From Stylophora pistillata (taxonomy: Eukaryota): a stretch of 64,000 nucleotides of DNA. Each line of letters starts with the position of its first letter. The first letter of the stretch is position 1. The notes below the pieces were generated by a model. That model was not told the origin of the DNA, did not search any database, and saw only the letters and a list, made by a program, of their open reading frames with translations. Shown here piece by piece: positions 10,001 to 29,300 of the stretch. Where the stretch lies: the NCBI RefSeq assembly GCF_002571385.2, contig NW_019218119.1, positions 142,382-206,381 on the forward strand, given 5' to 3'. The position numbers were made by a program, and so were the translations under genes.

Positions 10001-13000
10001 GTGTCCACATTGTTTTAGCATATACCACACAAGTGAATAGTGCTTTTCGCGCGCACTGATTGGCTTGTTCGGAAGTGAATAGCAAATATTATTTACCTCC
10101 GAACCGCCGATGGAATAAAACCGCGCCTCAACAGTTTCAGTTCCGAGAATGTTTCTGTCATTGAAAGAAATAAATGAGTTTTTTGGTATCTGCGTGGTAT
10201 ATACTAAACTAATTATTCCCCTCAGTGTCGAAGAGAGTGGAGAATATCCGCCACTGAACACTTTCACTTCGGTGAATAATTGCTAATTAAGAGGCTGACT
10301 TTTATCTTGGTGAAAGACCCCAACGTCTTGACCATTCAAGTTTACAACTTTGCCTGGTTTATAGTTTATTTGGACCTCCTTCTTGATTTGAATTTTATAA
10401 AATATCTTTTGATGAGTTCCATTTCGTTAAAGTATCATTCATTTCATTGTCTCTTTATGGGCACCTTATCTACGATTGGCTTTGTCCATCAAGCCGAAAT
10501 AACTTCTCCATACAATATTATAACTAAATACGATATCAAGGTCATTAGAATAAAGGGACGAGGCTCGTTGTTCGAAGGCCCATAAGCGCTAACCCGACGT
10601 TAAATTTTAATCCAAGTTTCTTTATTCCTTTTTTCAAAGCCTTTTTTCGGATAAGGTCTCTCTAATCTTTTTAGAAAATTCAATCACCAGATCGTAAGCC
10701 AAAAAATTTATGCTGAATTCTCTCTTAATTAAAGCTTTCCGATCTGAAATCAGATTTCACACTAACCCAAAGCTTTGAACAACACGGCCCTGCTGGGGCA
10801 CGTTTTTCGAAAGTCCCGGTCACTTGTCGGGCCCGTAAAGCTGCTCTGTTTACATTCAAGATGGGGATTTCAAAACTTTTGAAAATAATACAATAAAACT
10901 ATTAGCTAAAGAAACAAAATGGACTGATTTGGGTGCCAGAATTCGAACCTACTTTCCTATCCTTTAAATTTTGATTTTAAAACGTGGCTTCGGGCCCATT
11001 AAGTTACCGGGACTTTCGAGAAACGGGCGCCTGAGCACTAACTAAGAAGCTCTTGATTGTTGAACAAATTCTCCTTGTCAGCACCCTGGGACATTTATAG
11101 AGAACAGTATGGAGAATATGCATACTGATGTTAGGGTGTCAAGGGTTAAAATGTTATTCCTTCATGCAACTCAAAGTTAATCTTCCGAAGGATTCACTGT
11201 CTGCGAATTATTTTACCTGGCATTGATGTCCTGGTCGTAAGGCTCCGTGACGAAAACACTGTCGTCTTCCACCTTCATTAATCACGCAGTATCCAGGTTT
11301 CACGCGGCACGCATCATTGTAGCACTCCTCGCAAGAGAGGCACGAGAAAGGTGTGCCTGAGCAAGCCCCACTGGAACAGCGATCATTTCTAGTGCATGCC
11401 TTTCGGTCGTTACACGGCAAATTGTTGTCGTTTGTCCAAGCATTCTTGTTTGCACTGTTGCAATTCTATTGGAAGAAAGGACAATACGCAACAAACGTTA
11501 ATAACTAATAGTTTTTCCTGACATCAAGGCTTTAAGAATGTATTGGAATGTATCTAATCGCAGCAATACTTTCATTGCGGTTTTTTTCTCCATTAAGTTT
11601 TTTTTTTTTTTTTTATCAAGCGTTATTTCAGTAGGGTGCATCTTCTACCAGCTCTAAGTTGTTGAAACGCCGTATTAACTCAAACACTCATCGCTCCCGA
11701 ATAAACAATGCAAGTCCGAATAAAAGTCTCTCCCGAATGAGGTCGCGTTTAGGATAGCAAGGTTTAAGCGCCGGGGTCTCGGTGTTGCGTCAATAGCCTA
11801 TTTCTGAATTACCCTCGGCCTCTTTTTCAAAGCGAGGCCTGGTGCTCAACCATTCTTGTGAGAATGAGTTTAATTTGCATGTGAATGAAAACTTATTTTC
11901 ATATGAAAGGATGAGCACCAGGACTCGTTTTGAAAATGAGGCCAAGGGTAATTCGGAAATGGGCTATTCGAAGACTTCTTTCACACGCTGTAGTACTTAA
12001 GTCGTAGTTGGACTATCTCGACGGAAAGAGATGGAAGTAATTAAGAAAGCACAGATTCAGACGTAAAGGTGGCGTATGCTTCCATGCTATAACACGTGGA
12101 CTCAAGATCGAAGTTGAGTGAAGAAACCACGGTTTTAAAATGCAATTAATCTCTTTGTCGCGGCCATTTCTTCATATGCGGCGGCCTCAAATAAGGGCCA
12201 CGGACCTTGTTCCAGTAAATAGGGTACTTTCTCTCGACTTGCTAGTCAAAGCTCGGGCATGACAAAAAGGGAATAAAACAATCTTACCTGACACTGGTTA
12301 CTTGGGTTCACTCTGCCATACGCATAACACTGGTTGTTGATTTTACATTGCCTCAGCTCACATTTTAAACCCACTTTGGTGTAGCACGAATGACAACTGC
12401 ATGTAAAACTACCGAACGTATTGGTACAGGTATGCTGGCATGGTCGGGTATTACACTCATTGACGTCTGTTCAAAGAAGAAATAGGACAAAAAGAGTAGG
12501 AAACCTGTAAGTAAGTCGGCTGAATCAGATGTAATATGCCAGCAAGGCTCTCATTATTAGGGCACAGGCAGACCACACTACGGTGGCCGTGGTTAATAAT
12601 TGTTGACTTGAGACGAACAAAATCCGTAAGGGTTATGAGCTCTGAAAATTGCTTGTCTAAATTACATTTCGATTTGAAAATCTCAAGAAGGCCACATAAA
12701 ATTTTTCGCCTACATGGGCCGTTTGTAGCGTCTTTTTACTCAATTACTTTTAGCCAGAAGGAGAGTCTCCCTTTTCCCCGACTAGTCTCATATCATCCCG
12801 CGGGCAGTAGCCTGTTTGCAGGCGGTACTTTGTGTTTTCAAGCGCGAGACTCGGTGCGGCGAATATTCGGTTGCCATATTGGCATAATTAATTATTCATA
12901 ACCGATAAAGCGAAAAATTTGAACGCGACCTCGCTTTGAAGAGCCCTAAAAAAAGAGACGAATGGGTTAAAATTGGCTCACTAGGCTTCGTAAAACTCCC

Positions 13001-15824
13001 TTTTCTGAGTTTTAGGAGTATTTGCTTCTAAATCAACGCACGGCTTTTTGATGTATCTGCAATTTGCTCTTTAAATGAACGTAAGTAAAAGTAGAATCAT
13101 TTTGCACTTGAAAATACTCAAAGTTCGGGCATTTTTTTGTGTGAAAATCAATTTTCAAAAGCGAATTCCTGAAAACCTTTATTACCCTAAAAGTACAAGC
13201 TAAGGTTCGCATTGTCTCAGATAAGATACTGCAATTTCGCAAGGAATTTTCGAGTTTCGGCGTGGCGGAGTTTTTGGTAGTGAAAAAGGGCATAGCCGAC
13301 ATAGATGTAGGGTTTTTATGTTGTTAATGCCAAACCCTGCAAACGGCCGTTTTAGGCTTGAGCATTTTCAATGGCTAGATTTTAAAACTCGCGGGTTGAG
13401 TGTGATAAAACGAAACGATAGCACAAACAATAACTTGCAAGGCCTTTGTTTCATAACTCCGCGCTAACAAGGTAAATGAGCTAGACGTTTATTCCCTGTT
13501 GAAGAAAGGACGCAAGATCTCGTTGATTGTGTCAGTGTCAGTCAGTTAACACTACAGATCTAAAATTTTTTCGCTACCGCCAGAAAATGTTGTGAGAACA
13601 ATAGGCATTCTGCCCAACGTCATCTCTGGTTTCGGAAAATTCACGATTTTCCTTCTTCACTTACCCAGTGTTTTCATTTTTGTTGACTCTCTGTCAATCA
13701 GTGGGGTGTCGAGGATAGTAATAGTCATCGCCCTAAAGAAGACCAGTCTACGGTCACATTTTCCTCCAGTTGGTTAAGGAGGGGTTCGTTATTTACTTTG
13801 ATAAATTGTATGTTTGGCACATATTTACAGTATGTTTGCATAGCCGTGCGTGATAGAATGACGTAACCAAGAACAAATTTGCGCGTGGGCTCATGATCGA
13901 ATAATTTTGCGACCTTTACCCTTTCCACTACAAGACTCAGAGTATTGTCACGACCAAGACGAGAAAACTCTGAACTTTCACATTGCACAATATAGAATTA
14001 GGTAGAACCAGTACTCGATAAAATCGACATTCCGTGGCCTATAAAACGGAAATAAAACTAACTAGTATACTCTTTCTTTTTTTTTATAAGAACGTCTAAT
14101 TTTGGAGCTGAGGCTGAACGTTCTTAAATTTTTTTGCGAGTCGAGGCTGAAAACATTCTTAAGATGTGCGCAAATTACATGGTAGGCACTATTTCAGACT
14201 TTGTATCACCTGATGACTTTTATGATGTGGAAGTTAATTTGAAACAGTTATAAATAAGAACTGCTGATTATGACAAACCGAGGTGGGTGTCACCGATGTT
14301 AATGTTATACAAAACATGCCCTTAATTAATTGAGTATTTTGGTTAAGTTACATTTGCTACCTTGATTTTATGCTTGTCATTCAATATACAGAATAGCAAA
14401 ATCAAAACATTCTTAATCGACTCTCATCCCGAGGAAAGTTCTTAAAACGTTCTTAAATAGACCCTTCCACGATTTTAGCGGTCATATTGGTTGGGGGTGA
14501 AACAAAACCTCGTTGCTTAGCAACGAGCCATAGAATCTCTTATGATAAGAAGACGCGCATCGCTTCCCTCGTTTAATTTTCGCTTTGTTCAGGAACAAAA
14601 ATTAATATTCATCGCTGAAAAAGAGAAGACATTAATAAAGGTGAGTGACTTTTTCTCCTCTTAGCGACAAATGTTTTCTTCTCTGCTTTTTATGGGAATA
14701 TTGAGATCGTTTTTTCTTTGGACGTGATCTCAAGCTCGACATTCTTATAAAAAAAGGTTCTCATTAAAAAAAAAAGTACTCTTTCAAGTTAAAATACAGT
14801 ACTTAAAATCTTATTCCACTTTTAGTTCTCTTGATAGTGCGCTGATTGTTTCAAGGCGATTTTTCTAGGAAGGAATTCATCCTACGCATTTGGTTGTTTG
14901 TCAATGCTGAATTCCAGAACGTGCCGCTACAACGCTCTCAAACAACTGCTCTCACGCGTGTGTGACATATTTCATCTTGAACTGTCATCATGACGAATGC
15001 CACTCCTGTGTTCGAAATCATGCCCATGCACACAATTCTGCAGATTAACTTAAGCGTAAAAGTAAATAATGGTTTTTTTCGTTTTGTACATCAAGAATCC
15101 CTGTTTAAAGCTTGTCAAACTACAAAAGAAAAGAAAAAACCTCGCTTCTCCGCATCAGAAGTCGGCGCTTTAAAGCGTGAAAGTTTATCATGTTTACCAT
15201 AGTTAGTCCCCTCTACTATGTGTTTACTAATGAAGTGTTGGATTATCAGCTTACACAGATATTGAATCCATTTGGAACAGTTGCACAATGCGAACACGGG
15301 GAGCAATGAAACAATGACGAACTTCCAATTTTATGTTTTCCATCGCTAAAAAGAAAATTAAAATATTGAAATTTTTTCCATGTCAGCTTCGTAAAATCTT
15401 GTCAATGGTTGTCGATTGCCAGCGCTCACTCACAAGTGTTTAATTTCGCGTTCATTCATGCATGGATCTACTTACCTCCTTCGCAACAAGTTCCCTGATA
15501 TCCAGGGCGACACCTACATCCACTAGCATAAGGGGTTCCTCCGTTCTTACACTGATCTCTGTTACAGGCTTGTACCTCATCTAAACGGTACGGGCAAGAT
15601 CCCCCGCAAGCTTCTACCACAGTTTTTGTTCTTGTTCTTCTTTGAGTTCCGCTTGTTCCGCACCGATGGCTGCAGCTACTCCATGAGGTCCACGAGCTAA
15701 CTTGACAATTTCGTGCACCACACGGAGGAGGAGAACGTCGCCGTCGTCGTCGCCGCCACGAATCGATATCTCTCGCCAGAACTAGCACCATCAATACGAT
15801 AGCTAAAAACTCGCTAATCCGCAT
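429..15824 (-). CDS. Gene A: giant extracellular multidomain protein (SP, poly-Arg, TSP1, EGF, cbEGF, Cys-rich repeats, disintegrin-like, ~19 FN3/Ig-like DxTPP repeats); 3' end lies outside the window
   Basis: Manual exon chain with GT-AG sites and consistent phases: 15824-15476, 12466-12288, 11465-11217, 9908-9660, 9465-9246, 8565-8403, 7992-7837, 7123-1456, 1034-429. Sum 7839 nt = 2613 codons with no stop seen. The last exon ends at a donor (AAG|gttagc), so the gene continues to the left. Confidence 0.88.
1456..7123 (-). CDS. Gene A exon 8 (5.7 kb): array of ~17 FN3/Ig-like ~110-aa repeats
   Basis: ORF 1450..7071; acceptor tttgcag|G at 7123, donor GAG|gtatga at 1456. Repeat consensus DxTPP..G.V.DG...D.DYQ...W..F.D.ESG...Y...GT...L..G..YY.TV.A.N.AGL....SDG. 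Confidence 0.92.
7438..7622. mobile_element. MITE (inverted repeat) in a gene A intron
   Basis: atagaccacttttatgaatggctgc...aatattcttttgttcaaatttaaattagcccta / tagggctaatttaaatttaaacaaaagaatatt...gcagctatttatgaaagtgatctat. Confidence 0.8.
7837..11465 (-). CDS. Gene A exons 3-7: tandem Cys-rich repeats (C-D-D-G-N-x-C-T..D.C..G.C) and a disintegrin-like segment
   Basis: Exons 11465-11217 and 9908-9660 (both 249 nt, phase 0-0), 9465-9246, 8565-8403, 7992-7837. Motifs CNDRKACTRNDRCSSGAC, CDDGNACTRADTCRSGQC, CDDGNKCSKQDTCNAGRC, GTICRPAVDACDRPER. Confidence 0.85.
8700..9030. repeat. Degenerate minisatellite of ~20-30-bp units centred on a TGCGATTTATAAATCGCA-like palindrome
   Basis: aaatcgca and tttg(c/t)gat recur about ten times. 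Confidence 0.65.
10557..11150. mobile_element. Cluster of adjacent MITEs (~10557-10791, ~10793-11032) plus a TTAA-ended fragment
   Basis: ggctcgttgttcgaagg / ctttgaacaacacggccc; ggggcacgtttttcgaaagtcccggt / accgggactttcgagaaacgggcgcc; ...agggtgtcaagggttaa. Confidence 0.7.
11792..11968. mobile_element. MITE
   Basis: TIRs aatagcctatttctgaattaccctcggcctc / gaggccaagggtaattcggaaatgggctatt. Confidence 0.8.
12288..12466 (-). CDS. Gene A exon 2: calcium-binding EGF domain plus start of the first Cys-rich repeat (not in the ORF track)
   Basis: Acceptor tttgaacag|AC; translation DVNECNTRPCQHTCTNTFGSFTCSCHSCYTKVGLKCELRQCKINNQCYAYGRVNPSNQCQ; donor CAG|gtaaga. Confidence 0.88.
15476..15824 (-). CDS. 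Gene A first exon A1 (proximal): signal peptide, WRRRRRRR, TSP1, EGF-like
   Basis: MRISEFLAIVLMVLVLARDIDSWRRRRRRRSPPPC...WTSWSSCSHRCGTSGTQRRTR...CCEG. Phase-1 donor GAAGGAG|gtaagt joins exon 2 to give G-DVNEC. Confidence 0.88.
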
Positions 15825-16275
15825 TTTTTTTTTTTTTTTAGTAAATTAATTTCTGGCGAAGTTTTATCGTCTAAAATGAAAAGGAAGGTTGTAGACCCCG
15901 AAATAAACCAGGATAACGCAACGCAATGACGATGGCTCGAAACGGTATCACCTCACTGTATCAAATGAGACTGTTTTAGGGTCAAAATATATAATCTACT
16001 CGACCACTCTTGAGAAATGCTAACCCTTCTTGCAGAAGAGTGTGTTTTGGGTTCTTCAAAAATTCGCTGTTTACCTGCACGAAAGAGGTTGACGGAAAAC
16101 GTGACCATTACTTTGTGATGAAACAATATTGGTGGTGTTATTGTTTCATAACCCTGTTTATCATTTCTTATGTAAGGTTAATTGCGTCATGTCTTAATGT
16201 GAAGGTGTCAAATGAGTACCAAACTCCCCGTTTCAAAATTTCAGTAAGCACTTAGGACTTAGTGCAGCTGCAGCC
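15825..16275. promoter_or_regulatory. Putative bidirectional promoter P1 (A1 <- -> B1)
   Basis: 451 bp between divergent ATGs; TATA-like element near 15985. Function inferred from geometry only. Confidence 0.5.
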
Positions 16276-16470
16276 ATGCAACGGCTACGTAGTTTTGCAC
16301 TAATATTGGAGATTATTTTAATGATTCGCCATGCCAGAGCTGCGGCAGTGTTAGGACAGAGACTCTCGTTTGTAAAGCAAAGCACATGTACTTATGATTA
16401 CGAAGTCGCAGTTCATACTGCAAGAGGCACACGCACTACAGCCAGTGAAGGATTTCATCTTCACGCTCTG
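16276..16470 (+). CDS. Candidate alternative (distal) first exon B1 of gene B: signal peptide plus first strands of the lipoprotein N-terminal domain
   Basis: MQRLRSFALILEIILMIRHARA...CTYDYEVAVHTARGTRTTASEGFHLHAL|gtgagt. Homologous to exon 26145-26333, same phase-0 donor after 'AL', good Kozak context (gccATG). Confidence 0.72.
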
Positions 16471-18066
16471 GTGAGTAGAAAAATGTGTTCACAGTATTTT
16501 TACTGCTTTGACGCGCTCGAAGAGACGTGCTTACACATCATTGAAGCGAGGAAGATGCGATTTGTCTCGGTCATTTCATTTGTTTCCGCCGTGTTTATAT
16601 GGCTCGCGGCACATATTGGCGGGAGCGTGCGTGACAAGTTGCACAACTTTACATCATTGCAAAAGCTGTTATTCGTGTCGCAATGCCCTCTTTTGAAAGA
16701 GTGAGATGTTTTGATTTGAGATGAGAGAAAGAGAGAGAGAGAAGAAAATATTGGTTCGCTAGATGTCAATTAAAATGTAAACCTCTTTTATTTGAATGCG
16801 GAATGGCTTGTCTTGGAACGTGACTTAATAAGTAAATATTTAAACACTTTTAATGTAAACTATTACTTACAATCTGCCTTTTCATATATCCTCGCAACAT
16901 TACGCATTTCAGCATGTCTCAGACAAAGGGGTGTACCCCTTTGTTAGTTTTTCAGGATAATTTTTTTCCATGTAGGTCACGTTTCTCTGTAAAATTTCGA
17001 AAGCATGTTTGTATTTACTCCCTTTCTCAGAAAAAAAAAAACCGGGAGCGTTTACTTAACAAATTGTGTCAAATGTTTTGATGAGTTTGTCTCTTCTCCA
17101 CACCCACTTGCAAAAAATGTATAAACTCAGTAAGGAGAAATTACGCGTTAATCTGGATTTCTTCCAAAGTTTCCATGTTGTTCGTTTTTCTACTAGCATT
17201 ACCTACCAGCAAGGAAATAATCTTATAAAGCTCTTTCTCTAGGATTAATTGGTATATGTTCACTTTGAAAGCAAATTTGGAACGCTGGGGCATATTTGGG
17301 AATACACACGTATGCATTTGGAAAGAGACCTACTCTTCATTCTTGTTTTGAAAGCCTACGATAATCCCGTGTCTCAGTTTCGTTAGAGTTAGTCGTTCTT
17401 TGTCCCCACACATTTGTATTCACTGATTTACACTGACTAAATGTTCCCTTGGTTACGAATTCTTACGTTCAGCGAATTCAAAACTTTGCCGCTTTTCTTG
17501 ACAGACGTTTGACAGCTATGTGAAATGAATGAGAACCTGTTTTAGGAACAGAAAAAAAAAAACCTATTATACTATCTTGAGCGTGTTTTTCATGTATCGC
17601 ACATTCCTGTTTTCTTGAGCGGTGGTGTTTGTGGGATCATCTGAATAGTTTCTTGCGTGGGCCAATGAAATGGGACGATGAGTTAATTTCCTGTTCAGAA
17701 AAACATTTTTTTTTCACTCAAACCGATATACCAAGGTATTTCACTTCAATATCGGTAGAATATTATCAGTCAGAAGAAATTGTTTGATGTGACGTTTCAC
17801 ACATGTTGAGCAGTGATAACGACTCCATTGGCTGATCCCAGAGTCAGATTTTCTTGTTCGTAAATAGTTTATTTATATATTTACGATCAACAGGAAGAGA
17901 ACAAACAGCTATGTACTGCAACGAGCTTTGAACGTCTGAAACACCAATACCTTTACCTAAGCCTCGAAATTTCTATTTTGGTACGGATCGCGGATTGTCC
18001 AATATACCTGTACGGCTTGGAATTAATAATTGTGTCCCATTCGTCATTTGGTTCAAATTACTTAGA

Positions 18067-18830
18067 CAGGGGTCGCACTAACGCTTCTTTTGTGTTTATA
18101 TTGGACAAAAAAAGTGTCATCGCATGCGTGAGACAAGTACGACCCTTTTGTCGCGACCAGACATAACTATGTCCGAAGGACCTAAAGATCAAAAAAGCCA
18201 ATGTCCTGCCTTGAAGCAGGTCATATCTTGTCTAATGACCTTAAAAAAAAAAAACAATTTTTTGCTTTTCTTCTGTCTTAACGTCAACAAAGTCCGAAAT
18301 ACCGGCAAAAATTGGATTTTAGAAATTCTGCAAAGACAACACGTCACCAGTTTTCTTTACAACGTTTCATCTGGTCCTTCGGGCGAATTTCAACCCATAC
18401 CAATTTACAAATTTGCACTATTCACCTGATTATTCTCAGTATGGGGATTAATTGTTTTCACCCTTTGGCTCGCTGATCATTTCCCATTTTTTCGCATCTG
18501 TCGACGTCGGTTTAAAGTGGCAAGAGCCAACATTTGTCGTTGGCGAGTGTTGTAAAATGAGTACAAACCAATAGGGTTTTGTACATTGAACAAATTAAAC
18601 AGAGATTGAAGAAATGTCGCTAATAAAACGAGCACCTGCCTAATGTCTACAAAATTATATTTAGTGCTCTTTTCGTGCGTGAAATATTAAGAGTTGACAG
18701 TCTGGTTTCAAATATCATTTATGTCGCACAAGTGCGACCTCCATGACTCCCGTGGTGTAAATGTCGCGACATATTTGTGGGACATCTTATGGCGCGACAT
18801 AAAAAAACTAAGGCCACAGCGCGACCCCTG
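18067..18830. mobile_element. hAT-like non-autonomous element
   Basis: TIRs caggggtcgcact / agcgcgacccctg, degenerate 8-bp flanks (acttagac/ccttacac). Absent from duplication copy 2. Confidence 0.6.
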
Positions 18831-19648
18831 CCTTACACTTCCCCCGGATCACATAAAGATCACATCAAGATTGACAACAAAATTGGTTCTAAAATAGAAC
18901 ATATTAGAAAATAATCAAATTTTGATATGTTGATTAAACTGAACAGGGGACATTCCATTAAAAAGCACGGTCGGGTCATTTCTTTTTCGACGGTGGAGAA
19001 TTCTCAACCGGATCATTCGGATTGCGAATGACGAACTGAAAAATGCGCCTTTACAACGCACTCAGACAGCTGCTATCACGCTGTATGATATTTCATTATT
19101 AAGTAAACACATCGAACTGTCATCGATGACAGTGCCGCGCTGTGCCGTGCTGTGTTCGAAATCATGTCTAACACACTATTCTGCACATTAACTTAAGCGT
19201 AATAGTAGACAATCGTTTTTTCCTTTTGTACATTAAGAATCCCTGCTTAAAACTTGTCAAACTGCGAAAGAAAAGAAAAAAACTCGCTCCCCCATGTCTG
19301 AAATCGGCGCTTTGAAAGTGTGAAATGTTATCGCATTTACTGAGGTTCACACGTCGAATTGCACATGTGCCGAACTTAATGCGCGTAAATGCATGTGAAG
19401 TAGATGTTTGAATAAATCAAACTCGACTGGTTTAAATTAAATGTGACGTTTGCCGTATCTATGACTGAAACAGTCGAAGATTCGACTTAGGTTCAACTTT
19501 TGTTTCAAACATCGCATCTCACATGTGCCGAATTTAATACATAAATTATAGGAAATTATTATGATTCATTTATTACCCACAATTCGCCAGGATTTCCGAG
19601 AAAGCCATGCGCGAAAAAGCCAAAACAGCAGAAAAAAATGGTGGAAGA

Positions 19649-19723
19649 CTATGGAATTTGTAGTTCTTGCTTTGCCAGAACTAGCACCATAAATACGATT
19701 GCCAAAAATTCGGTGATCCGCAT
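19649..19723 (-). pseudogene. Truncated copy of gene A exon A1 (signal peptide only)
   Basis: MRITEFLAIVFMVLVLAKQELQIP* versus MRISEFLAIVLMVLVLAR; the poly-Arg/TSP1 part is missing. Confidence 0.8.
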
Positions 19724-20197
19724 CTTTTTTGTCTTTTTCTGCGAAATTAATTTCTGGCGAAGTTTAATGGTTTAAAATGAAAATGAAAGTTGTAGACAGC
19801 GAAATAAACCTGGCTAGCGCAATTCGCTGTTTATCTAGACGGAAGAGGTTGACGTAAAACACTGGTGGTGCGATTGTCACATGACTTTGTTTATTATTTC
19901 TTGTGAAACGTTGTGTCATGTCTTAATGTGATGGTATCAGATGAATACCACACCCCCCGTTTCAGGCTTATACTATTTTGCGAAACAAAACGAAACGAAA
20001 CCAGGCGAGATCTAACGAAACTAAAGGAATAATGCCAACATATTTTCTAATAAGGTAAAGATAACTTTCACAAGGATTTTGAAGTAATCGTTAATTAATT
20101 TATTCCGCAAAGTAGTAGTTTAATAAGAGTTACTGTTTTGCACATACGCCCTATCACAATTTCAGTAAAGCACTTAGGACTCACTGCGGCTGGCGAC

Positions 20198-20423
20198 ATA
20201 CACCGTCTTCGCAGTTTTGCGATAATATTGCAGATTATTTTAATGCTGGAGCTGCGGCAGTGTTAGGACAGAGACTCTCGTTTGTAAAGCAAAGCACATG
20301 TACGTATGATTACGAGATTGCAGTCCATACTGCAAGAGGCATACGTATGATTACGAGATTGCAGTCCATACTGCAAGAGGCATACGCTCCACAGCCAGCG
20401 AAGGATTTCATCTTCACGCTCTG
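20198..20423 (+). pseudogene. Decayed copy of gene B exon B1
   Basis: ATG>ATA at 20198, small deletion in the signal peptide, 41-bp internal tandem duplication (20301-20382); donor ctg|gtgagt retained. Confidence 0.85.
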
Positions 20424-20591
20424 GTGAGTCGAAAAACGTGTTTACAGTTTATTTTTGTTTTAGTTTTGTTTTTTTTACCGCTTTGATAAACTGAGTTTCT
20501 TGCGTGGGAGGAGAAGCGTGTGCGAATCGAAGGGAAGTGCTTACAGCAACATCAGCGAAGCGTGGAAGATGCGGTCATTTCATTTGTTTCC

Positions 20592-21489
20592 GCCGTTTCT
20601 CGGTTATAAGGCGCACTCGGTTATGAGACGCACACCAAACTTAGCAACTTAGTCAAACAAGCCAAGTTCCCAAACTGAAAATTACGTGAAAACACTCGGT
20701 TATAAGATGCAGCAAAAGGTTGAGAGTTAACAAAAGGTGTGATGGATCCGAGAAAGTTTCACAGTTGCCCTGGCGGTGAAAGCAAATGGCGAAAAACTCC
20801 CACCGAAAGTCTTAATTGAAGGTGATCGACAGCTGAACATCAACGCACCACCAAGCATGCAAGTTTCAGTGCACAAAAAAGGCCTGATAGACGAAGAAGG
20901 TAGGTTTTTTATCTCCACATTGTTTATTCAGAGAAGGAACTTTTCGTGAGAGCGACACAGACACGATTCAAGGAATTTGAAACAAGGTTGAATGATTATT
21001 TTGTTGTCGCGGATATCATGTTACCGAGCACGTGTTGTTAAGAACGTATGAAAATTTACGCCGGTTTGTTTGCTTTTTCTATGCAAGTTGATTAGTATTC
21101 TAAAAGTAGTATTCCTTTTTAATTCATAGGAGTAAAGGATTGGATATTTACGCAATCTTTGCTACACCTCAGACTAAAAAGCTCTGCTTGTGTTTCGTGG
21201 TCATTTGACAGAGGTCGTATAAGAAACGGTTCCGTTTCAGAAACAGCACAACGGCTCTTTTCAGAGCCGCCCCTATTCTTTTCAGAACCACCACTAATTA
21301 AGTCAGTTACCAACAATAAGTGTCCTTTTCTTTTCTTTAACTATAAGTTCTGCTAAAATTGTGATCTAAAGATTTAGCTGCGCAAAAAAACTTGGATATA
21401 AGACGCAACTGATTTCAGCACTAACTTTCCACCCGAAGACAGAATTTTCTTGATAAAACCGTGCGCCTTATAACAGAGAAACTACGGTA
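20592..21489 (+). mobile_element. Internally deleted pogo/Tigger-like DNA transposon
   Basis: TIR-like ends ccgtttctcggttataaggcgcac / gtgcgccttataacagagaaactacggta; DDE remnant FTVALAVKANGEKLPPKVLI. Absent from duplication copy 1. Confidence 0.75.
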
Positions 21490-23314
21490 GGTCACGTTTC
21501 TTCGAGAGTATGTTCGTATTTACTCCCTTTCTTAGGAAAAAATGAGTAGTACTTAGAAAATTGTGTGCAAGGTTTTGATGTTTGTCTGCTCTCTATATCC
21601 ACCATCAGGAAAAAAAAGTATCGATTCAGTAAGGAGAAATTACGATTTCTTCGAAAGTTCCCTTGTTGTCCCATTTTCGAATAGCATCACCTACCAGCTA
21701 GGAAATAATCTTAAAAGCTCTGTTTCATTTTCACTTTGAAAGCAAATCAGTTTGGAAGGTTGGAGCATATTTGGGAATACACATGTATGTAATTGGAAAG
21801 GGAACCAATCTTCATTCTGGTCTTAAAAGCCTACAATGATCTCGTGTGCTTTAGTTTTGTTAGAGTTAGTCGTCCCTTGTCTGCTTATATTTGCACCTAC
21901 TGATTTATACACCAATAATATTCCCTTGCTTACGAACTCTTACGTCCAGCGAATTACAAAACTTCTTTTGCCTTCATAGATGTTTGACCGCCGTTTATGA
22001 GATAAATAAGGTTTACTTGTTTTAGTAAATGAAGAAAAAACTAGCGCACTATCTTGAGTGTAATCTGGATGGATTACACATTCTTGTTTTTCGTGAGCGG
22101 CGTTGTTCGTGGGGGCATCTGAATGATTTCTTACGTGGGCCAATGAAAGGGGATGATGACTTAACTTCCTGTTGCGAAAAAAATGTTTCTCTTTACTCAA
22201 ACCGATATACCATGGTGGAGATTTCGCTTCAATATCGGTAGTATAAAAATAGTCGGAAAAAATTGTTTGATGTGAGATTTTACATTGGTTGAGCCGTGAT
22301 AACGACTTCTTTGGCTGATCCCGGAGTCAGATTGTCCTGTTCGTAAATAGTTTATTTATATATTTGCGATCAATAGGAAAAGAACAGACAGCTATGCGCT
22401 GCAACGAGCTGAGAACGTCTGAAATACCAATACACACACCCAAAGCTCGAAATTTCGGATCGCAGTTGGTACAATATCCCCGTACGGCTTGGAATTAATA
22501 ATTGTGTTCCATTCGTCATTTGGCACAAATTCATGTAATCTTTCTGTGGTTTTCCAGATCACACAATTAAATGTAGTTCGTATTCTTTTTAACTTCAAAA
22601 AGTAGGACAGTGCTGTGTGTAACTAACTCCAGAAAGAAAACATCAATTTTACCTTCTCCGGCGCGTTGCTAACTTCCTAGCAGTAAGGATAAACTATCCG
22701 GTGTTGCTTCAAGTTTTTCTCAAAGTAGCTCAGGCGAATAACGAAAAGGCGCACGCCCCGCTCTTTCATTATTTTCCATCGCTGTGCTAAAATCCAATGG
22801 ACTGATGCACCAAATAGACCGATGCACCATCACAACATGAACATTAACAACAAAATGATAAATATATACAATTTATAGTGGGAGTCGCTCTCAAATACTA
22901 GATATGAAGAATTTTTCATTTTGAGCTTTTAATAGGAGAGCAAGCTGTGCCTCGATCCAACACATGGAATAATTGATTCAGTGAAACATGACAACGCTAA
23001 CATACTCATAAAAATAGTAAATTTTCAATATTGACAACAAAATTAGTTTTAAAATAGTGCATATTACAAATCAAATTTTGATCTGTTGATTAGACTGAAC
23101 CGGGAACATTCCGGTAGAAAGCACGTTCTGGTTATATCCTTTTCGACGATGGAGAATTCTAAACGGGATCATTCGGATTGCAATTAACGAACTGAAAAAC
23201 CCTTTGGCTGAATTTTTCTCGATGAAAACATGCGGTAGATTCACTGCGTAGTTTCGCCCATGTCTATGCTGTCTGTCTGAATTACGACAACCGTTATTCG
23301 TTCAGTAACCTCAC

Positions 23315-23660
23315 CTTGTTGGCAACAGATTCCTCCGTATCCCAGTCTGCAACTACATCCACCATTATTTGGTGTGCCGCCGTTTTGGCAATTACCCCTG
23401 TTGCAAGCTCGCGTCTCCTGCAGTTGATACGGGCAAGTTCCACCGCACTGCGCGGCCTGCAACTGTTGTCGTGTGCGACTCTGCGAGCCACTCGTTCCAC
23501 ATTGATGCGAGCAAGAACCCCAACTGGTCCAGCTTCCAACCTGACAGTTTCTAGCGCTACACGGAGGAGGCGACCTCCTTCGTCTCCTTCTCGACCAGAA
23601 AATCGAATTCGATCCAGTGATCAAAACCAAGAAACAGATTGTTAAGATACTGCTTTTCAT
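23315..23660 (-). CDS. Candidate alternative first exon A2 of gene A (SP, WSRRRRRR, TSP1, EGF-like)
   Basis: Intact paralogue of A1 with conserved Cys. Phase-1 donor CAACAAG|gtgagg at the same codon position as A1. I saw no downstream exons of its own. Confidence 0.75.
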
Positions 23661-25322
23661 GTTGTATTTCGATCAAAAACCTATTTTGTATGCTTGGTAT
23701 TCTCGTTAAACCAAACTCAAGAACTTTCAAAGTCTGGAAAACACGGATGTACTTCTTGAAATGAAGTACTTCCTCCGCCAATCGGGAAGGAAACGACTTC
23801 CGCTCAAAATATTTATCTTCAATTTGTATACGCAAATTCTATTTTTCACGGAATGACAGGTACGAAACTGTGAATGATTTGTAAGAAGGGTCTTTTTAGG
23901 GAACGTTCGACATGTTGAGACCAGTCTCTCTTTAAAGATAACAATTTATTTATGTAAGCGATTGCCTTCTGTTTTTAATTTCATCAAAAACAAGCCAACG
24001 AAAACACAATTAAAAGCCAGAGACCTTCTGTAATTAATTTTTCTGCTTTGTTGTGACATTTATCCTCTGCTAGATTTATTCTAATTAGCGATCATCCGTG
24101 CCGCCTGTTGAATGAAATGTTCCCTATGTTCGATGGGCACAGCATTAAGAAAGTTGGTGTTAAGGGCTAATAATTACAGAAGTTTAAGGTAAAAATCTCA
24201 CGATCCTTAATCTCAAACTATTTTAGTTCCTGTTATTTTGGTAACCTTTATTGCACCTCCATACGAAACTATAGAAGGAGGCGGCGTAGGACAGATCCCT
24301 TTTCAGGGCGGATTGTTTTAATTTGTAATTCAGCATTTACAAACTCTGTTGCGCGATTAACAATGCATCGCTACTGATAGGTAATCGCAATTTAAGCAAA
24401 CATCAACAGACAGGATTCCACAAACTTTGTTTTCTTTCCAATCCTCGTTTCGTTTAAAGAGTGTATCTTTTAGCGTTTTTTCAATTTCCATCTCTTGCCG
24501 TGTAGTTAGCCACACAAAGTGTTACTTTTGAAGTTGTTTTTAGTGAATTGAATTTTTGATGGTTGAAGTTTTATGAAAGTTTCCTTCCGAGATTTGAAGG
24601 TTTTGTGGTGTGTGTTTCTGGCATTTATCTTAAGTGGATCTGCAGAGGCAAGATATCAGTTTGGCTATAAGGTTCAGCGCTATATCGCTTTGTGTTCATC
24701 TTTCTAAATCCCTTTTAATCTCTCCTCTTAAAACCCTTTTTAACTTTGTTTGAATTTTCTATCAGCTTTCTCAGGCATAGGACAATTTTGGGAATAATGC
24801 AAGCGTTGCTACTCCACGCCCACTCTATGGAGTTCGTGTATGTCCGCAAAGCAACTTCTGCGTAGCTCAGTTAATCATTTTTCTATCAAAAAGAAATGCA
24901 CATTCAATGATCCACTTGATCTCTAGGGGTACTTGACCAAATATCAAGCATTTGAATTTCAAAACATATTTTTACGGTCGTATAAACAGCCTTTCTTTCA
25001 CACCACAAGAATCTCAGAACAAACGCGAGACGGTGTAAAAAAATCCAAATACTCCCTATCATTAACAATCAAGTCCTTTTTCTTTTAAAACTATCTCCTT
25101 AACATCTGGCCACCTTTTTTAAACAATAAATTCAGACCACCTACATTGTGTACAGGCTCACAAAATGTAACCAATATTTGCAACAGATCGCGTCAACTTA
25201 GTTTGGCTATCAGAGATTTGTCAAGAACTGTATATTTTCAGTGATCCAATCTTCTTCACACCACACTTGCGACATATCCAGTATGACCTAAAAAATCCAG
25301 ATACCTGTATGATTGGACTCAC

Positions 25323-25659
25323 CTCGTTCACAGCATGTCCCTCCGTATCCCGCTCTGCAACTGCATCTGCCGTTGGTCGGAGTGCCTCCGTTCCGGCAAT
25401 TGCCTCTATTACAGGCTTGAGTTTCTTGCAGATGGTATGGACATGTTCCTCCACAGGACGCGCCTGTAGTCACTGAACGTGTTCGTGCTTGTGATCCGCC
25501 CGTTCCGCAATGATGGGAACATGAACTCCAACTTGTCCAGCTTCCAACCTGACAGTTTACTGGGCTGCAAGGAGGAACCCTTCTCCGCCGCCGTCTTCTC
25601 CAAGCTTCCGTTTCAGTCAAAACGCAACAAAGCCATATTACTAGAAGTAACCTAGTCAT
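25323..25659 (-). CDS. Candidate alternative first exon A3 of gene A (SP, WRRRRRRR, TSP1, EGF-like)
   Basis: Intact paralogue of A1; phase-1 donor GAACGAG|gtgagt at the same codon position. Confidence 0.75.
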
Positions 25660-26144
25660 TTCTAAGATTCTTAGTTTAGTCTCTGCCTCAATAGAGAAGT
25701 GGGATTAACTTTTCCCTTCGCAAGGAGCCGCGGTTAATTGTTAAAGATCATTCTTTAATTCTGAGCTAGTATTGACTGCGGGTACATTTTCTAGGAGAGG
25801 GTTTTTTTCTTTGATAAATATATCCACGAATTGCATGTTAACAATATGCGCTTAAACTGCCATGTAACGGAAGTCGTCACCGTATTGAAACACAATATTT
25901 TATTTACCGGCATTGACTTTAAGCCTATACTCGTGTAATATAACCACGGTTTTAATTCCGGGATTAATCGTTGTTGACTTACTTACTTGTTAAGGTTTCT
26001 AAGGAAGTCGGTAAAGACCTCGGGGCGATAAAGATTCGTGGCTGCATTATAATTTGCTCACCAAGGGTGAAAAATAGCGAAATTTTACGGACTATGTCTC
26101 AATGAAATAAGATAGATGAAGAAGTGTGTATCGCAATTTCTACG
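25660..26144. promoter_or_regulatory. Putative bidirectional promoter P3 (A3 <- -> B3)
   Basis: 485 bp between divergent ATGs, same geometry as P1. Confidence 0.5.
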
Positions 26145-26333
26145 ATGCTCAGAAAATACCTGTTTGCGTTGCTAGTAATTTTACATATAGACGGGTTGCA
26201 AGGGAAAAGCGCCACGCAGAAATCGCTGCGACTCCAGCACCTCACAAAATGTATCTACGATTACGAAGTGACAGTTTACACTGCCCGAGGGGACAAGTCT
26301 ACCCACAGCGATGGTTACCAAGTTTACGCTCTG
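26145..26333 (+). CDS. Gene B proximal first exon B3
   Basis: MLRKYLFALLVILHIDGLQG...CIYDYEVTVYTARGDKSTHSDGYQVYAL|gtaagg; signal peptide and phase-0 donor. Confidence 0.82.
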
Positions 26334-29300
26334 GTAAGGCTCACTTCGATCAGTTCAGGTTGATTAACAGAGCTTTCTGTATCACAGTTATATTTCTCTG
26401 TTTCCTTGCATGTGCGACCAGCGTTACAAAATATGCAATGATTTACGCTTTCCTCGGAGAAAGCAAAGCTTGTCACATCGCTTTGTATATAAAGTATATT
26501 GTAGAGGAGACTAATTAGATAAAATAGGAATGGGAAGAGGGAACAGCTTAATCTGCGTTTCCTACGACGGCAGAAAACTGCTGAAAAAGTCGCTCTGTAG
26601 CAGAGAGAATAACATTGAATTGACTGATCATAAAACGACATTATCCCACTCTAGAGTCGTGGTTTTTTTTTCACATGTGTAGACTTCGCGTTTGCAAGGA
26701 AATGGTGTTCGGCTTTGCGCTTTGGTCGGTTAACATTTTTTGTTTTTAGCTTGCTGTTTGCGATTACGCGCTCTAGCATGTGATTCAAAGATATTTTCAT
26801 GAAACGGCTACAAGCAAATGTATTTTTATTTAACATGTATTAGTACGTGTTAAACGCAACGCGTGCAATATAGCAAGTGGAACGAGGCTGATACTTCCAA
26901 GGACTTGATATTCTTTTCAAATACCGTCATGCTATTCTCGCTAATGGTTGAAATTGATCATAGTCATTTTAATTCCAGCTGAGTCGTTTCAACCATCTTT
27001 AATCTTTCCTCTTTCTTTACACACGCTGATTAAAATTCATCAGGCTATAGAGTGCAATAAATGAATTTATATCCATGCTATAAAACTAATCTTTACTCTA
27101 CAAATTACTTGCTACAGTGTATACCTTACCAGCTATTCACAAAGCAAAGGCTTTTTTTTTTCATGAATGCTGCGTATCTAATTCTTGAATGGAGAAAGCG
27201 CTTAAATTGAGTCCACAATTCTGTCTCTCTAAGGCTACAAGGCAGGCTGTTCTAGAAGTTTGCGCCATTGTAGCTAAAACTATTTTTTAGAGACAGTGTA
27301 GTTGGTCCATTAAGACTACAGAAATGTTTTGTTGTGGCAACAGTAACTACTCCATCACTTAATAATGGATTCCACTCAAAAGCGTGCTTAATATCGCATC
27401 CTGTTGAAAGTTCGAATTCAAGAGCCATTGGTCTTATTTTAAGAATTCCCTGGCACAATGATGTGAGAACTGTGGTCAATTGTTTGTTTGACCATATAAG
27501 GTCATGAATTGGATTTTATTGTTCGATCTTCGATAGTTTCAATTCTCCCCACGCACCTTTTCAAAATGTTGGTTTGCGACGTATGCTATCAAAAGATTAC
27601 TCTTGAATCAACTTACACGCAAAGGCACGCAATTACATGTACCTCGCGCAACATTTCCGCATGCCGTCTGTGCTATTTTCGCCACTATGCATGCAATAAA
27701 GGACCCGAATTCGCAAGGAGTATAAGTCTTCCCAGATCGTCTTGGGATTAACTTTACATTTGTAGATTTTTCCTAACTAGTTTTTCTACAACAGGTTTTC
27801 CTTTCGAGTGAAGGTGCGAGTGAAAATATATATATATATATATATGACAAAATGGGGCTTGAAACGTCCTCGTGTCTCTATGCAAATATTACTCTTTTGT
27901 TGGACAAAGACATTTTTTCAAGGGAGAAATTTGAAGTGAAGATTGCACGAAGAGGGCACTACTGTGCCTTTGCTTGACGCATGTACTTAAAAATATTGAT
28001 CACTGATCCTGAGTTACTATTACTTCCTGAAAAAAAACAAACCAGCAATTCAGCAAGTTTGCGCATAGATTCCCAGTGTCTAGATCACAACGGGTTTAAC
28101 AACTGCAATAACTAATTGATTCTCTCTTTTTTAACAACATTGTCTGCTTAAGCAACATTTTCTGGGCTTCCCGGCCCAGGGTATTGATGGATTGATGGAA
28201 TCATACTCTTTGGCTCTGCTTATCATACTATATTTAAAAATATTGTCTACAGAATAAAACACAAAGTATTGATAATGGCTATGTTTAGGAGAGCAACGAA
28301 AGTTATTATTCCAACAGGAATTTCATTTGTTATTTTACTTTATTTTGAAGGAAAGCCTAATTTCGTTGATAATTATTGCCTACGTTTATTTCAGGTCGAC
28401 TTAACACCAGCATCTCGTGACTTTAATGGGAGGGAACACTCGCATCTCATTAAGCTTGACGTGCGGGAACCGCGCTTAAGGCGCCTACATCATGGGCGTG
28501 TTCTTGCCAATCACCCTGTCAATGAAGAGTTTGAAGAGCAGCTGTCAAAACCATTTTACTTCCAGCAGGAAGATCATGGTACCATTACTGACGTTCTTTT
28601 TCCAAAGAGGTCCGAGTCCCCCGAAATTGCGGCCTTCAAGAAAGGTAAGGGGAAGAAAGACAAAATTTATCCCCACATTCATCCACAGCATCAGCACCTC
28701 AACAGTTTGGACGTCCAGATATAATTTTCGATTTACTTAGTACGTACTTAAATGTAATAACGATTTAAGTGCCGTTCAACTGAGGAGCGGAGAAACTACA
28801 GAATATCTCATGTTTAAGGTCTTCGTTGTATAATTTTGACAGCCCTTTCCAATATAAACCATACTCATTTTGTAAATGAATGGTTTTGGCTGAACTAAAC
28901 GTCAAAGATAAGGCTGAAATTGCCTAGTTTCTTTCTTTTACTTGTAGTGAAACTAAAAGGAAACAACAAGAACAACTTTCACGCAAAGTGCACAGGCTGT
29001 TTGAAATACGTATATTTTGATGTTTTGAGGCTTTCTACTAAATTGGCAGATTGGTGTCATGCACCGGAAAATTAGGGTTTCGTTTCAGTCAACTCAGGCT
29101 TATGCTGCACATGAGTTCTCTCCAATAGAAGGGATCGTGGGGAGGGGGAGGGTCATTCTGTTAAACAACGTACGATTTTGCTCCCATTACTCATTATTTG
29201 ACAACAGGTATTGCAGGTGCATTTCAGCTTAACCTTAAAGATGCGCACAGATCCAACATCTATGAAGTACAAGAACACGATGATTCTGGTTTCTTTCGAA

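What the first reader, a model, noticed from the sequence alone, without database searches (positions are those of the whole stretch)
15825..26144. Cassette geometry predicts paired, mutually exclusive isoforms through sense-antisense collision
Seen: A1/B1 ATGs are 451 bp apart and A3/B3 ATGs 485 bp apart, both divergent. A B1 transcript from P1 must run rightwards across A2, A3 and P3, while an A3 transcript from P3 must run leftwards across B1 and P1, giving about 9.4 kb of convergent overlap. Inference: on one allele only matched pairs (A1+B1 or A3+B3) avoid interference, which would be a built-in promoter-choice switch by cell type, stage or chance.
Basis: inference. Interest (0 to 1): 0.78.

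Follow-up and report, generated by a model that had tools for sequence, protein, structure and literature searches.

The report
Interleaved first exons of two coral genes
Two giant back-to-back genes of the coral Stylophora pistillata share a conserved stretch where their alternative first exons are interleaved, so some transcripts must run head-on through each other, but nothing yet shows that this makes isoforms mutually exclusive.

Summary
The window is Stylophora pistillata. Gene A (minus strand, LOC111337481, named 'Versican core protein') has three intact SP-TSP1-EGF first exons: A1, A2 and A3. Gene B (plus strand, a giant Vitellogenin_N + FN3 protein) has two: B1 and B3. The A1/B1 and A3/B3 ATGs are 451 and 485 nt apart, and B1-ATG to A3-ATG is 9,384 nt.

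An RNA contig joins B1 directly to B exon 2 and exon 3. So B transcripts from the distal promoter do cross A2, A3, P3 and B3. Stranded reads show minus-strand RNA over A3. All five first exons, in the same order, are intact and under purifying selection in another coral (dN/dS 0.09-0.34). A closer relative has lost B3 but keeps A3. A Desmophyllum locus has a single, non-interleaved cassette.

- A1+B3 is also collision-free; only B1 against A2/A3 collides.
- No B3, A2 or A3 splice junction was seen.
- P1 and P3 share no sequence motif.
- Partner exons are lost independently of each other.

Most likely this is a duplicated bidirectional 5' module giving independently regulated alternative promoters, with interference a possible secondary effect. 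The scan noted this same stretch before under other titles.

The parts
12288..12466 (-). Gene A exon 2 (cbEGF, 'D|VNEC...NQCQ'), the only copy in the window. It is the common acceptor (phase 1) for A1, A2 and A3.
   Evidence: Acceptor ...ttgaacag|AC and donor CAG|gtaaga read. Single tblastn hit. The annotated proteins PFX19966.1 and XP_022799528.1 read ...CCEG|DVNEC.
15476..15824 (-). A1, the proximal first exon of gene A (signal peptide, RRRRRRR, TSP1, EGF). Donor GGAG|gtaagt, phase 1.
   Evidence: It is the N-terminus of the public S. pistillata models. Orthologues are intact, dN/dS 0.31 and 0.14.
15825..16275 (.). P1, the 451-nt divergent spacer between the A1 and B1 ATGs.
   Evidence: Blocks next to both ATGs are conserved in relatives. 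Orthologous spacers are 433, 408 and 446 nt.
16276..16470 (+). B1, the distal first exon of gene B (signal peptide plus the start of the lipoprotein N-terminal domain). Donor CTG|gtgagt, phase 0.
   Evidence: RNA contig of run X1 (2,184 nt, depth 39.8): the 30 letters before exon 2 equal window 16440-16469 exactly. Orthologues are intact, dN/dS 0.24 and 0.27.
19670..20423 (.). Decayed duplicate of cassette 1. The A1' remnant keeps 18 codons. In B2' the ATG has become ATA and there is a 41-nt internal tandem duplication.
   Evidence: Repeat families D5, D8, D11, D14 and D16. tblastn fragments. Absent from relative I.
23315..23660 (-). A2, the middle first exon of gene A. Donor CAAG|gtgagg, phase 1. 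No B partner upstream.
   Evidence: Orthologues are 90.5% and 83% identical in protein, dN/dS 0.17 and 0.09.
25323..25659 (-). A3, the distal first exon of gene A. Donor CGAG|gtgagt, phase 1.
   Evidence: Stranded run X24 has minus-strand RNA peaking here at 3.8x. Orthologues are intact, dN/dS 0.26 and 0.15.
25660..26144 (.). P3, the 485-nt divergent spacer between the A3 and B3 ATGs.
   Evidence: Orthologous spacers are 586 and 475 nt. The half next to B3, together with B3 itself (25862-26679), is missing in relative I and is single-copy in this genome.
26145..26333 (+). B3, the proximal first exon of gene B. Donor CTG|gtaagg, phase 0. Intact, but not seen spliced.
   Evidence: Orthologue is 73% identical and intact, dN/dS 0.34. 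Only unspliced contigs cover it, and no B3->exon 2 joint was found in 4 runs.
28395..28644 (+). Gene B exon 2, the common acceptor for B1 and B3.
   Evidence: The RNA contig is joined to B1 on one side and to exon 3 (29211...) on the other. The Montipora RefSeq protein has the same three-exon N-terminus.
29208..41302 (+). Gene B exon 3, a giant open frame of about 4,030 codons (Vitellogenin_N / HEAT-like region, then an FN3-like array).
16276..25659 (.). Zone of potential convergent overlap, 9,384 nt. It is intron 1 of B1-initiated B transcripts and intron 1 of A3-initiated A transcripts.
   Evidence: The plus-strand passage is proven by the B1->exon 2 junction. The minus-strand passage is observed only from 25800 down to 23200 and inferred beyond that.

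Best explanation
This is an array of duplicated bidirectional 5' modules. The ancestral state was one head-to-head cassette: an A first exon, a spacer of about 0.5 kb, and a B first exon. That cassette served two divergent giant secreted or adhesion-type genes. Tandem duplication of the cassette necessarily interleaves the copies, giving A-body ... A1|B1 ... A2 ... A3|B3 ... B-body. Each surviving first exon keeps its own proximal promoter, ATG, signal peptide and donor, and splices to the single exon 2 of its gene. This gives gene A three N-terminal TSP1-EGF variants and gene B two N-termini. I consider promoter choice to be set mainly by promoter-specific regulation (cell type or stage). The convergent overlap between B1 and A2/A3 transcription is real, but it is a by-product that is tolerated or at most fine-tunes expression. 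Shown: the geometry, the B1->exon 2->exon 3 splice, minus-strand transcription of A3, and conservation with purifying selection on all five exons. Inferred: A2, A3 and B3 splicing to exon 2, independent regulation, and the origin by duplication.
For: The B1->exon 2->exon 3 RNA contig comes. Public models start A1->exon 2. All five exons sit in the same order and are intact in L027, with dN/dS 0.09-0.34 at dS 0.5-1.0, while the flanks are unalignable apart from about 30-260 nt upstream of each exon. Relative I keeps A1, A2, A3 and B1 (dN/dS 0.17-0.31) but lacks B3. A more distant coral has three cassettes, with a B partner for A2 as well. A Desmophyllum locus has one simple cassette. A paralogous S. 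pistillata locus is also interleaved. P1 and P3 share no 8-mer or 9-mer across species and B1 and B3 are only about 37% identical, so the promoters are old and different rather than equivalent. Human 5'-overlapping coding pairs show TSS-dependent overlap without down-regulation (PMC8076222).
Against: No read or contig shows A2, A3 or B3 joined to exon 2. In X1 the contig over A3 runs unspliced through its donor. Long conservation of an arrangement that forces promoter-spanning antisense transcription could itself reflect selection for interference. In mouse ES cells such pairs are reported as mutually exclusive (PMC12720443). The RNA evidence is thin: one contig, and about 20 stranded reads.
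Confidence: 0.58

Rival explanations
1. P1 and P3 are strictly bidirectional promoters. Transcription from each runs through the other and silences it in cis, as an antisense toggle. One allele then makes either A1+B1 or A3+B3.
For: The geometry is of the promoter-spanning convergent type that modelling and mouse ES cell data link to mutual exclusion (PMC12720443). B1 transcripts provably cross P3. In stranded run X24, minus-strand reads on A3 and plus-strand reads clustered at 25.4-26.8 kb occur together, as expected if P3 fires both ways. The layout has been kept for a long time.
Against: A1+B3 is equally collision-free, so matching does not follow from geometry alone. B3 is deleted in a close relative while A3 stays under selection. 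A2 has no partner, and B partners come and go between species. No B3 splice was seen. No data exist on co-expression in cis. Human 5'-overlapping coding pairs show no down-regulation (PMC8076222).
Confidence: 0.17
2. A2 and A3 are not first exons of gene A. They are small stand-alone genes whose unspliced transcripts encode secreted TSP1-EGF mini-proteins of 139 and 123 aa.
For: The X1 contig 25130-25672 passes the A3 donor unspliced. Minus-strand reads continue downstream of A3. Both frames reach a stop soon after the donor.
Against: Tails after the donor differ in sequence and length among orthologues. The GT donors and phase 1 are conserved. Conservation stops at the donor. Annotated relatives join this exon type to the cbEGF exon.
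Confidence: 0.08
3. B3, A2 and A3 are dying relics of duplication. Only A1 (annotated) and B1 (seen in RNA) are functional.
For: Public models use A1 only. Only B1 was seen spliced. A decayed cassette shows that copies do die. B3 was lost in a relative.
Against: Open frames, ATGs and donors are intact. dN/dS is 0.09-0.34 over dS up to 1.0 for A2, A3 and B3. A3 is transcribed in sense.
Confidence: 0.06

Closest known systems
Clustered protocadherin / UGT1A-type variable first-exon arrays
   Same: Tandem paralogous first exons, each with its own promoter, ATG and donor and no acceptor, splice to shared downstream exons. In Pcdh-alpha, antisense transcription through the exon and promoter takes part in promoter choice (my knowledge: Canzio et al. 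2019).
   Different: Here two genes on opposite strands draw on one interleaved array. There are only 3 + 2 exons. The exons encode a short N-terminal module rather than the whole ectodomain. No shared promoter element was found. No stochastic choice has been shown.
[quoted passage not shown] 2021, PMC8076222)
   Same: Head-to-head coding genes whose overlap exists only when distal promoters are used.
   Different: In that human survey, overlap was not linked to down-regulation. It does not describe duplicated coding first exons interleaved as cassettes and conserved between species.
Promoter-spanning antisense toggle loci (Mutzel et al. 2025, PMC12720443; Xist/Tsix and Airn/Igf2r from my knowledge)
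   Same: Two convergent units each transcribe through the other's promoter, which is the geometry that can give mutually exclusive states in cis.
   Different: Those cases involve a non-coding partner or a synthetic construct. Here both partners are coding isoforms, each gene also has a non-overlapping promoter, and exclusivity is untested.
Classical bidirectional promoters (head-to-head genes less than 1 kb apart)
   Same: A1/B1 and A3/B3 are divergent, with spacers of 451 and 485 nt conserved at 0.4-0.6 kb.
   Different: The module is duplicated in tandem within the pair, and partners can be lost independently.

Membership tests
Variable first-exon array spliced to constant exons | Two or more tandem paralogous first exons, each with its own ATG and a 5' splice donor but no acceptor | tested here: met
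   A1, A2 and A3 are 58-67% identical to each other. B1 and B3 are 37% identical. All have an ATG and a GT donor of one phase per gene.
Variable first-exon array spliced to constant exons | Each variable exon is spliced to the same downstream exon | tested here: inconclusive
   B1->exon 2 is shown by RNA. A1->exon 2 appears in public models. A2, A3 and B3 junctions were not seen in 4 runs or in two junction scans. There is only one exon 2 per gene in the window.
Variable first-exon array spliced to constant exons | Own promoter upstream of each variable exon | tested here: inconclusive
   About 30-260 nt upstream of each exon stays alignable at dS 0.5-1.0 while the rest does not. There are sense-strand reads at A3. 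No TSS data exist.
Bidirectional promoter pair | Divergent genes with starts less than 1 kb apart | tested here: met
   Spacers are 451 and 485 nt between ATGs, and 408-586 nt in three other corals.
Bidirectional promoter pair | Both directions active together | tested here: inconclusive
   X24 shows both strands around P3, but from only about 13 reads. P1 lies outside the stretch that was laid.
Promoter-spanning antisense toggle (transcriptional interference) | Each unit transcribes through the other's promoter | tested here: inconclusive
   B1 through P3 is shown by the splice junction. A3 through P1 is only inferred; minus-strand reads were seen from 25800 to 23200.
Promoter-spanning antisense toggle (transcriptional interference) | Mutually exclusive expression in cis | not testable with these tools
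This needs allele- or cell-resolved 5' or long-read RNA.

The most novel reading that the evidence does not exclude
The interleaved cassettes form a conserved cis toggle in stony corals. Distal-promoter transcription of B (from B1) and of A (from A2/A3) silence each other's promoters. A cell or allele therefore commits to one coordinated combination of N-terminal isoforms of two giant matrix proteins. This would be a protein-coding, two-gene analogue of antisense-driven promoter choice.
Probability: 0.15. Interest if true: 0.75.

Novelty: new variant of a known kind. Interest (0 to 1): 0.45.

Why it matters
Alternative first exons, bidirectional promoters and antisense interference are each well known. 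A conserved array in which the duplicated first exons of two opposite-strand coding genes are interleaved is unusual, because the distal isoforms must be transcribed through each other's promoters. It offers a natural test of whether convergent transcription of coding genes constrains isoform choice. There is also a built-in comparison: one relative has lost B3, and a Desmophyllum locus has a single cassette. If the overlap has no effect, the locus is still a clear example of how tandem duplication of a bidirectional 5' module creates N-terminal diversity in two genes at once.

Tried and rejected
- **Word search with A3.** The 47 hits were ORF-style calls from genomic contigs that read into the intron, so they gave no splice evidence.
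- **Junction scans.** I scanned JGI metagenome contigs for A-exon->exon 2 and B-exon->exon 2 junctions and got 0 hits. This says nothing about S. pistillata RNA.
- **Raw-read run X21.** It laid 0 reads, so it is no test.
- **Run X2.** It looks like unspliced RNA or DNA, since exon 2 runs into intron 2, and is uninformative.
- **First search with the 1,873-aa exon.** It timed out and worked with a shorter region.
- **Look-up of the RefSeq protein's locus.** It is not on record, because the window's own genome is left out. I could not see which first exon of gene B, or which other isoforms of gene A, are annotated.
- **Cell-atlas paper supplements.** The held files do not contain the gene.
- **CpG observed/expected across the region.** It is about 1 everywhere and marks no promoters.
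- **Shared k-mers among P1 and P3 spacers of four species.** None were found.
- **B2 remnant upstream of A2.** None was found.

Exons were searched one by one by reference.
Full report
**What is there.** The window is Stylophora pistillata contig C335:142382-206381. Identity rests on a 100% match to PFX19966.1 and XP_022799528.1 on a contig of the same length.

Gene A is on the minus strand. It is LOC111337481, named 'Versican core protein', 2,654 or 2,737 aa, with no link or lectin domain. It runs from the array leftwards:
- a first exon (signal peptide, RRRRRRR, TSP1, EGF);
- exon 2, a cbEGF, at 12288-12466;
- Cys-rich exons at 8.4-11.5 kb;
- a 1,873-codon FN3-like exon at 1450-7071.

Gene B is on the plus strand and runs rightwards:
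- a first exon (signal peptide plus about 40 residues);
- exon 2 at 28395-28644;
- exon 3 from 29208, about 4,030 codons.

The same three-exon N-terminus is seen in the Montipora RefSeq protein of 6,916 aa. The family (Vitellogenin_N plus an FN3 array, 6.3-6.9 thousand aa) reaches an octocoral and Nematostella.

**The observation.** The first exons are:
- A1 at 15476-15824, A2 at 23315-23660 and A3 at 25323-25659, all minus strand and donor phase 1;
- B1 at 16276-16470 and B3 at 26145-26333, both plus strand and donor phase 0.

The spacers between ATGs are 451 nt (A1/B1) and 485 nt (A3/B3). B1-ATG to A3-ATG is 9,384 nt. The window has only one A exon 2 and one B exon 2. A decayed copy of cassette 1 lies at 19.7-20.4 kb: A1' is cut to 18 codons, and B2' has ATG changed to ATA plus a 41-nt internal duplication. 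A2 has no B partner.

**RNA (one call allowed, 6,000 letters, 23200-29199).**
- **Run X1 (poly-A, contigs).** A 2,184-nt contig at depth 39.8 covers B exon 2. It continues upstream for 213 letters, and the last 30 are exactly window 16440-16469, the 3' end of B1. The decayed copy differs from this by one letter. Downstream the contig continues into exon 3 at 29211. So the distal exon B1 is used, and its 11.9-kb intron holds A2, A3, P3 and B3.
- **Splice joints.** No joint from B3 to exon 2 appeared in any run. B3 and A3 are covered only by contigs colinear with the genome.
- **Run X24 (raw, stranded).** Its exon 2 reads behave as in a dUTP library. It gives about 12 reads of minus-strand RNA from 25800 down to 23200, peaking on A3. 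It gives about 6 reads of plus-strand RNA confined to 25400-26800, and 2 reads on exon 2. This is weak support for two-way activity at P3 and for leftward transcription from A3.
- **Runs X21 and X2.** X21 laid nothing. X2 looks unspliced throughout.

**Comparative evidence.**
- **Relative I** (TARA scaffold; its gene B protein is 93% identical to the window's) has A3, A2, B1 and A1 in the same order. All are intact, with conserved donors and dN/dS 0.17-0.31. Window 25862-26679, which holds B3, is replaced by 113 nt. That segment is single-copy in S. pistillata.
- **A further coral** (L025/L027; its gene B protein is 86% identical to the window's) has all five exons in the order exon 2(B) .. 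B3|A3 .. A2 .. B1|A1 .. exon 2(A). Its spacers are 586 and 408 nt, and dN/dS is 0.09-0.34 at dS 0.5-1.0. Elsewhere the DNA aligns only for about 30-260 nt upstream of each exon.
- **A more distant coral** (L026/L028) has three head-to-head cassettes, so A2 has a B partner there, and a retrotransposon is inserted.
- **A Desmophyllum locus** has one simple cassette.
- **A paralogous S. pistillata locus** about 135 kb away is interleaved too.

Together these fit tandem duplication of an ancestral bidirectional 5' module, long retention of the copies, and independent loss of single exons.

The convergent overlap is real for B1 (shown) against A3/A2 (inferred). 'Only matched pairs avoid interference' does not follow from it. 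A1 and B3 are the two proximal exons and never overlap, so three of the four A1/A3 x B1/B3 combinations are collision-free. The matched-pair idea needs the extra assumption that each spacer always fires both ways.

Three further observations weaken the idea of paired units:
- B3 was lost while A3 was kept in relative I, and A2 stands alone.
- P1 and P3 share no motif.
- B1 and B3 are old and divergent, about 37% identical.

In relative I every B transcript must cross A2 and A3, so the arrangement is at least tolerated. The literature points both ways. Human 5'-overlapping coding pairs show no down-regulation (PMC8076222). Promoter-spanning antisense pairs in mouse ES cells are mutually exclusive and can act as a toggle (PMC12720443).

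**Verdict.**
- The best reading is a conserved, interleaved array of alternative promoter and first-exon modules for two divergent genes, with interference possible but unproven.
- It is a new variant of known kinds.

Noticed in passing
L013-L016 versus L021/L022 (TARA contigs): Two forms of the relative's locus exist. The gene A body is 98% identical between them, but the cassette region is only 80-86% identical and rearranged. In L013, A1 and A3 are missing, there is a truncated extra A2, there are two B1 copies (one degenerate), and a Pao/rve retrotransposon is inserted. This is either two species or an old structural polymorphism.
   Followed up: partly
G000:C335:296001-326000 (L017-L019): This is a paralogous A'/B' locus in inverted orientation, and it is also interleaved: B'a | A'a, then B'b beyond A'a, A'b, a frameshifted A'c, two copies of A' exon 2, and a B'c | A'd cassette. 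The stretch contains assembly gaps.
   Followed up: partly
window 9660-9944 (minus): RefSeq XP_022799528.1 (2,737 aa) includes this Cys-rich exon. GenBank PFX19966.1 (2,654 aa) skips it, an 83-aa difference. 'Isoform X1' implies further RefSeq isoforms that I could not retrieve.
   Followed up: partly
window 1450-15824 (gene A): The public name 'Versican core protein' looks like a misnomer. Pfam finds only TSP1 in the first exon and FN3/Ig-like repeats, with no link or C-type lectin domain. The protein ends without a transmembrane segment.
   Followed up: partly
window 23200-25100: X1 contigs differ from the reference by 1-4% in the intronic parts but not in A3 or in the B1-exon 2 contig. This points to strain or lineage divergence in the 'coral metagenome' sample. 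Such variants could phase alleles.
   Followed up: no
window 24400-24800: Three runs (X1, X2, X24) cover this stretch between A3 and A2. In X24 the RNA is on the minus strand. It could be A3 pre-mRNA or an unannotated exon or 5' UTR of A2.
   Followed up: no
Oculina patagonica and Desmophyllum pertusum proteins: A-type and B-type genes carry neighbouring locus tags: OS493_002725/002726 in Desmophyllum, and ACROYT_G001761-G001793 with several of each type in Oculina. The A/B neighbourhood is therefore old and multiplied in other stony corals.
   Followed up: partly
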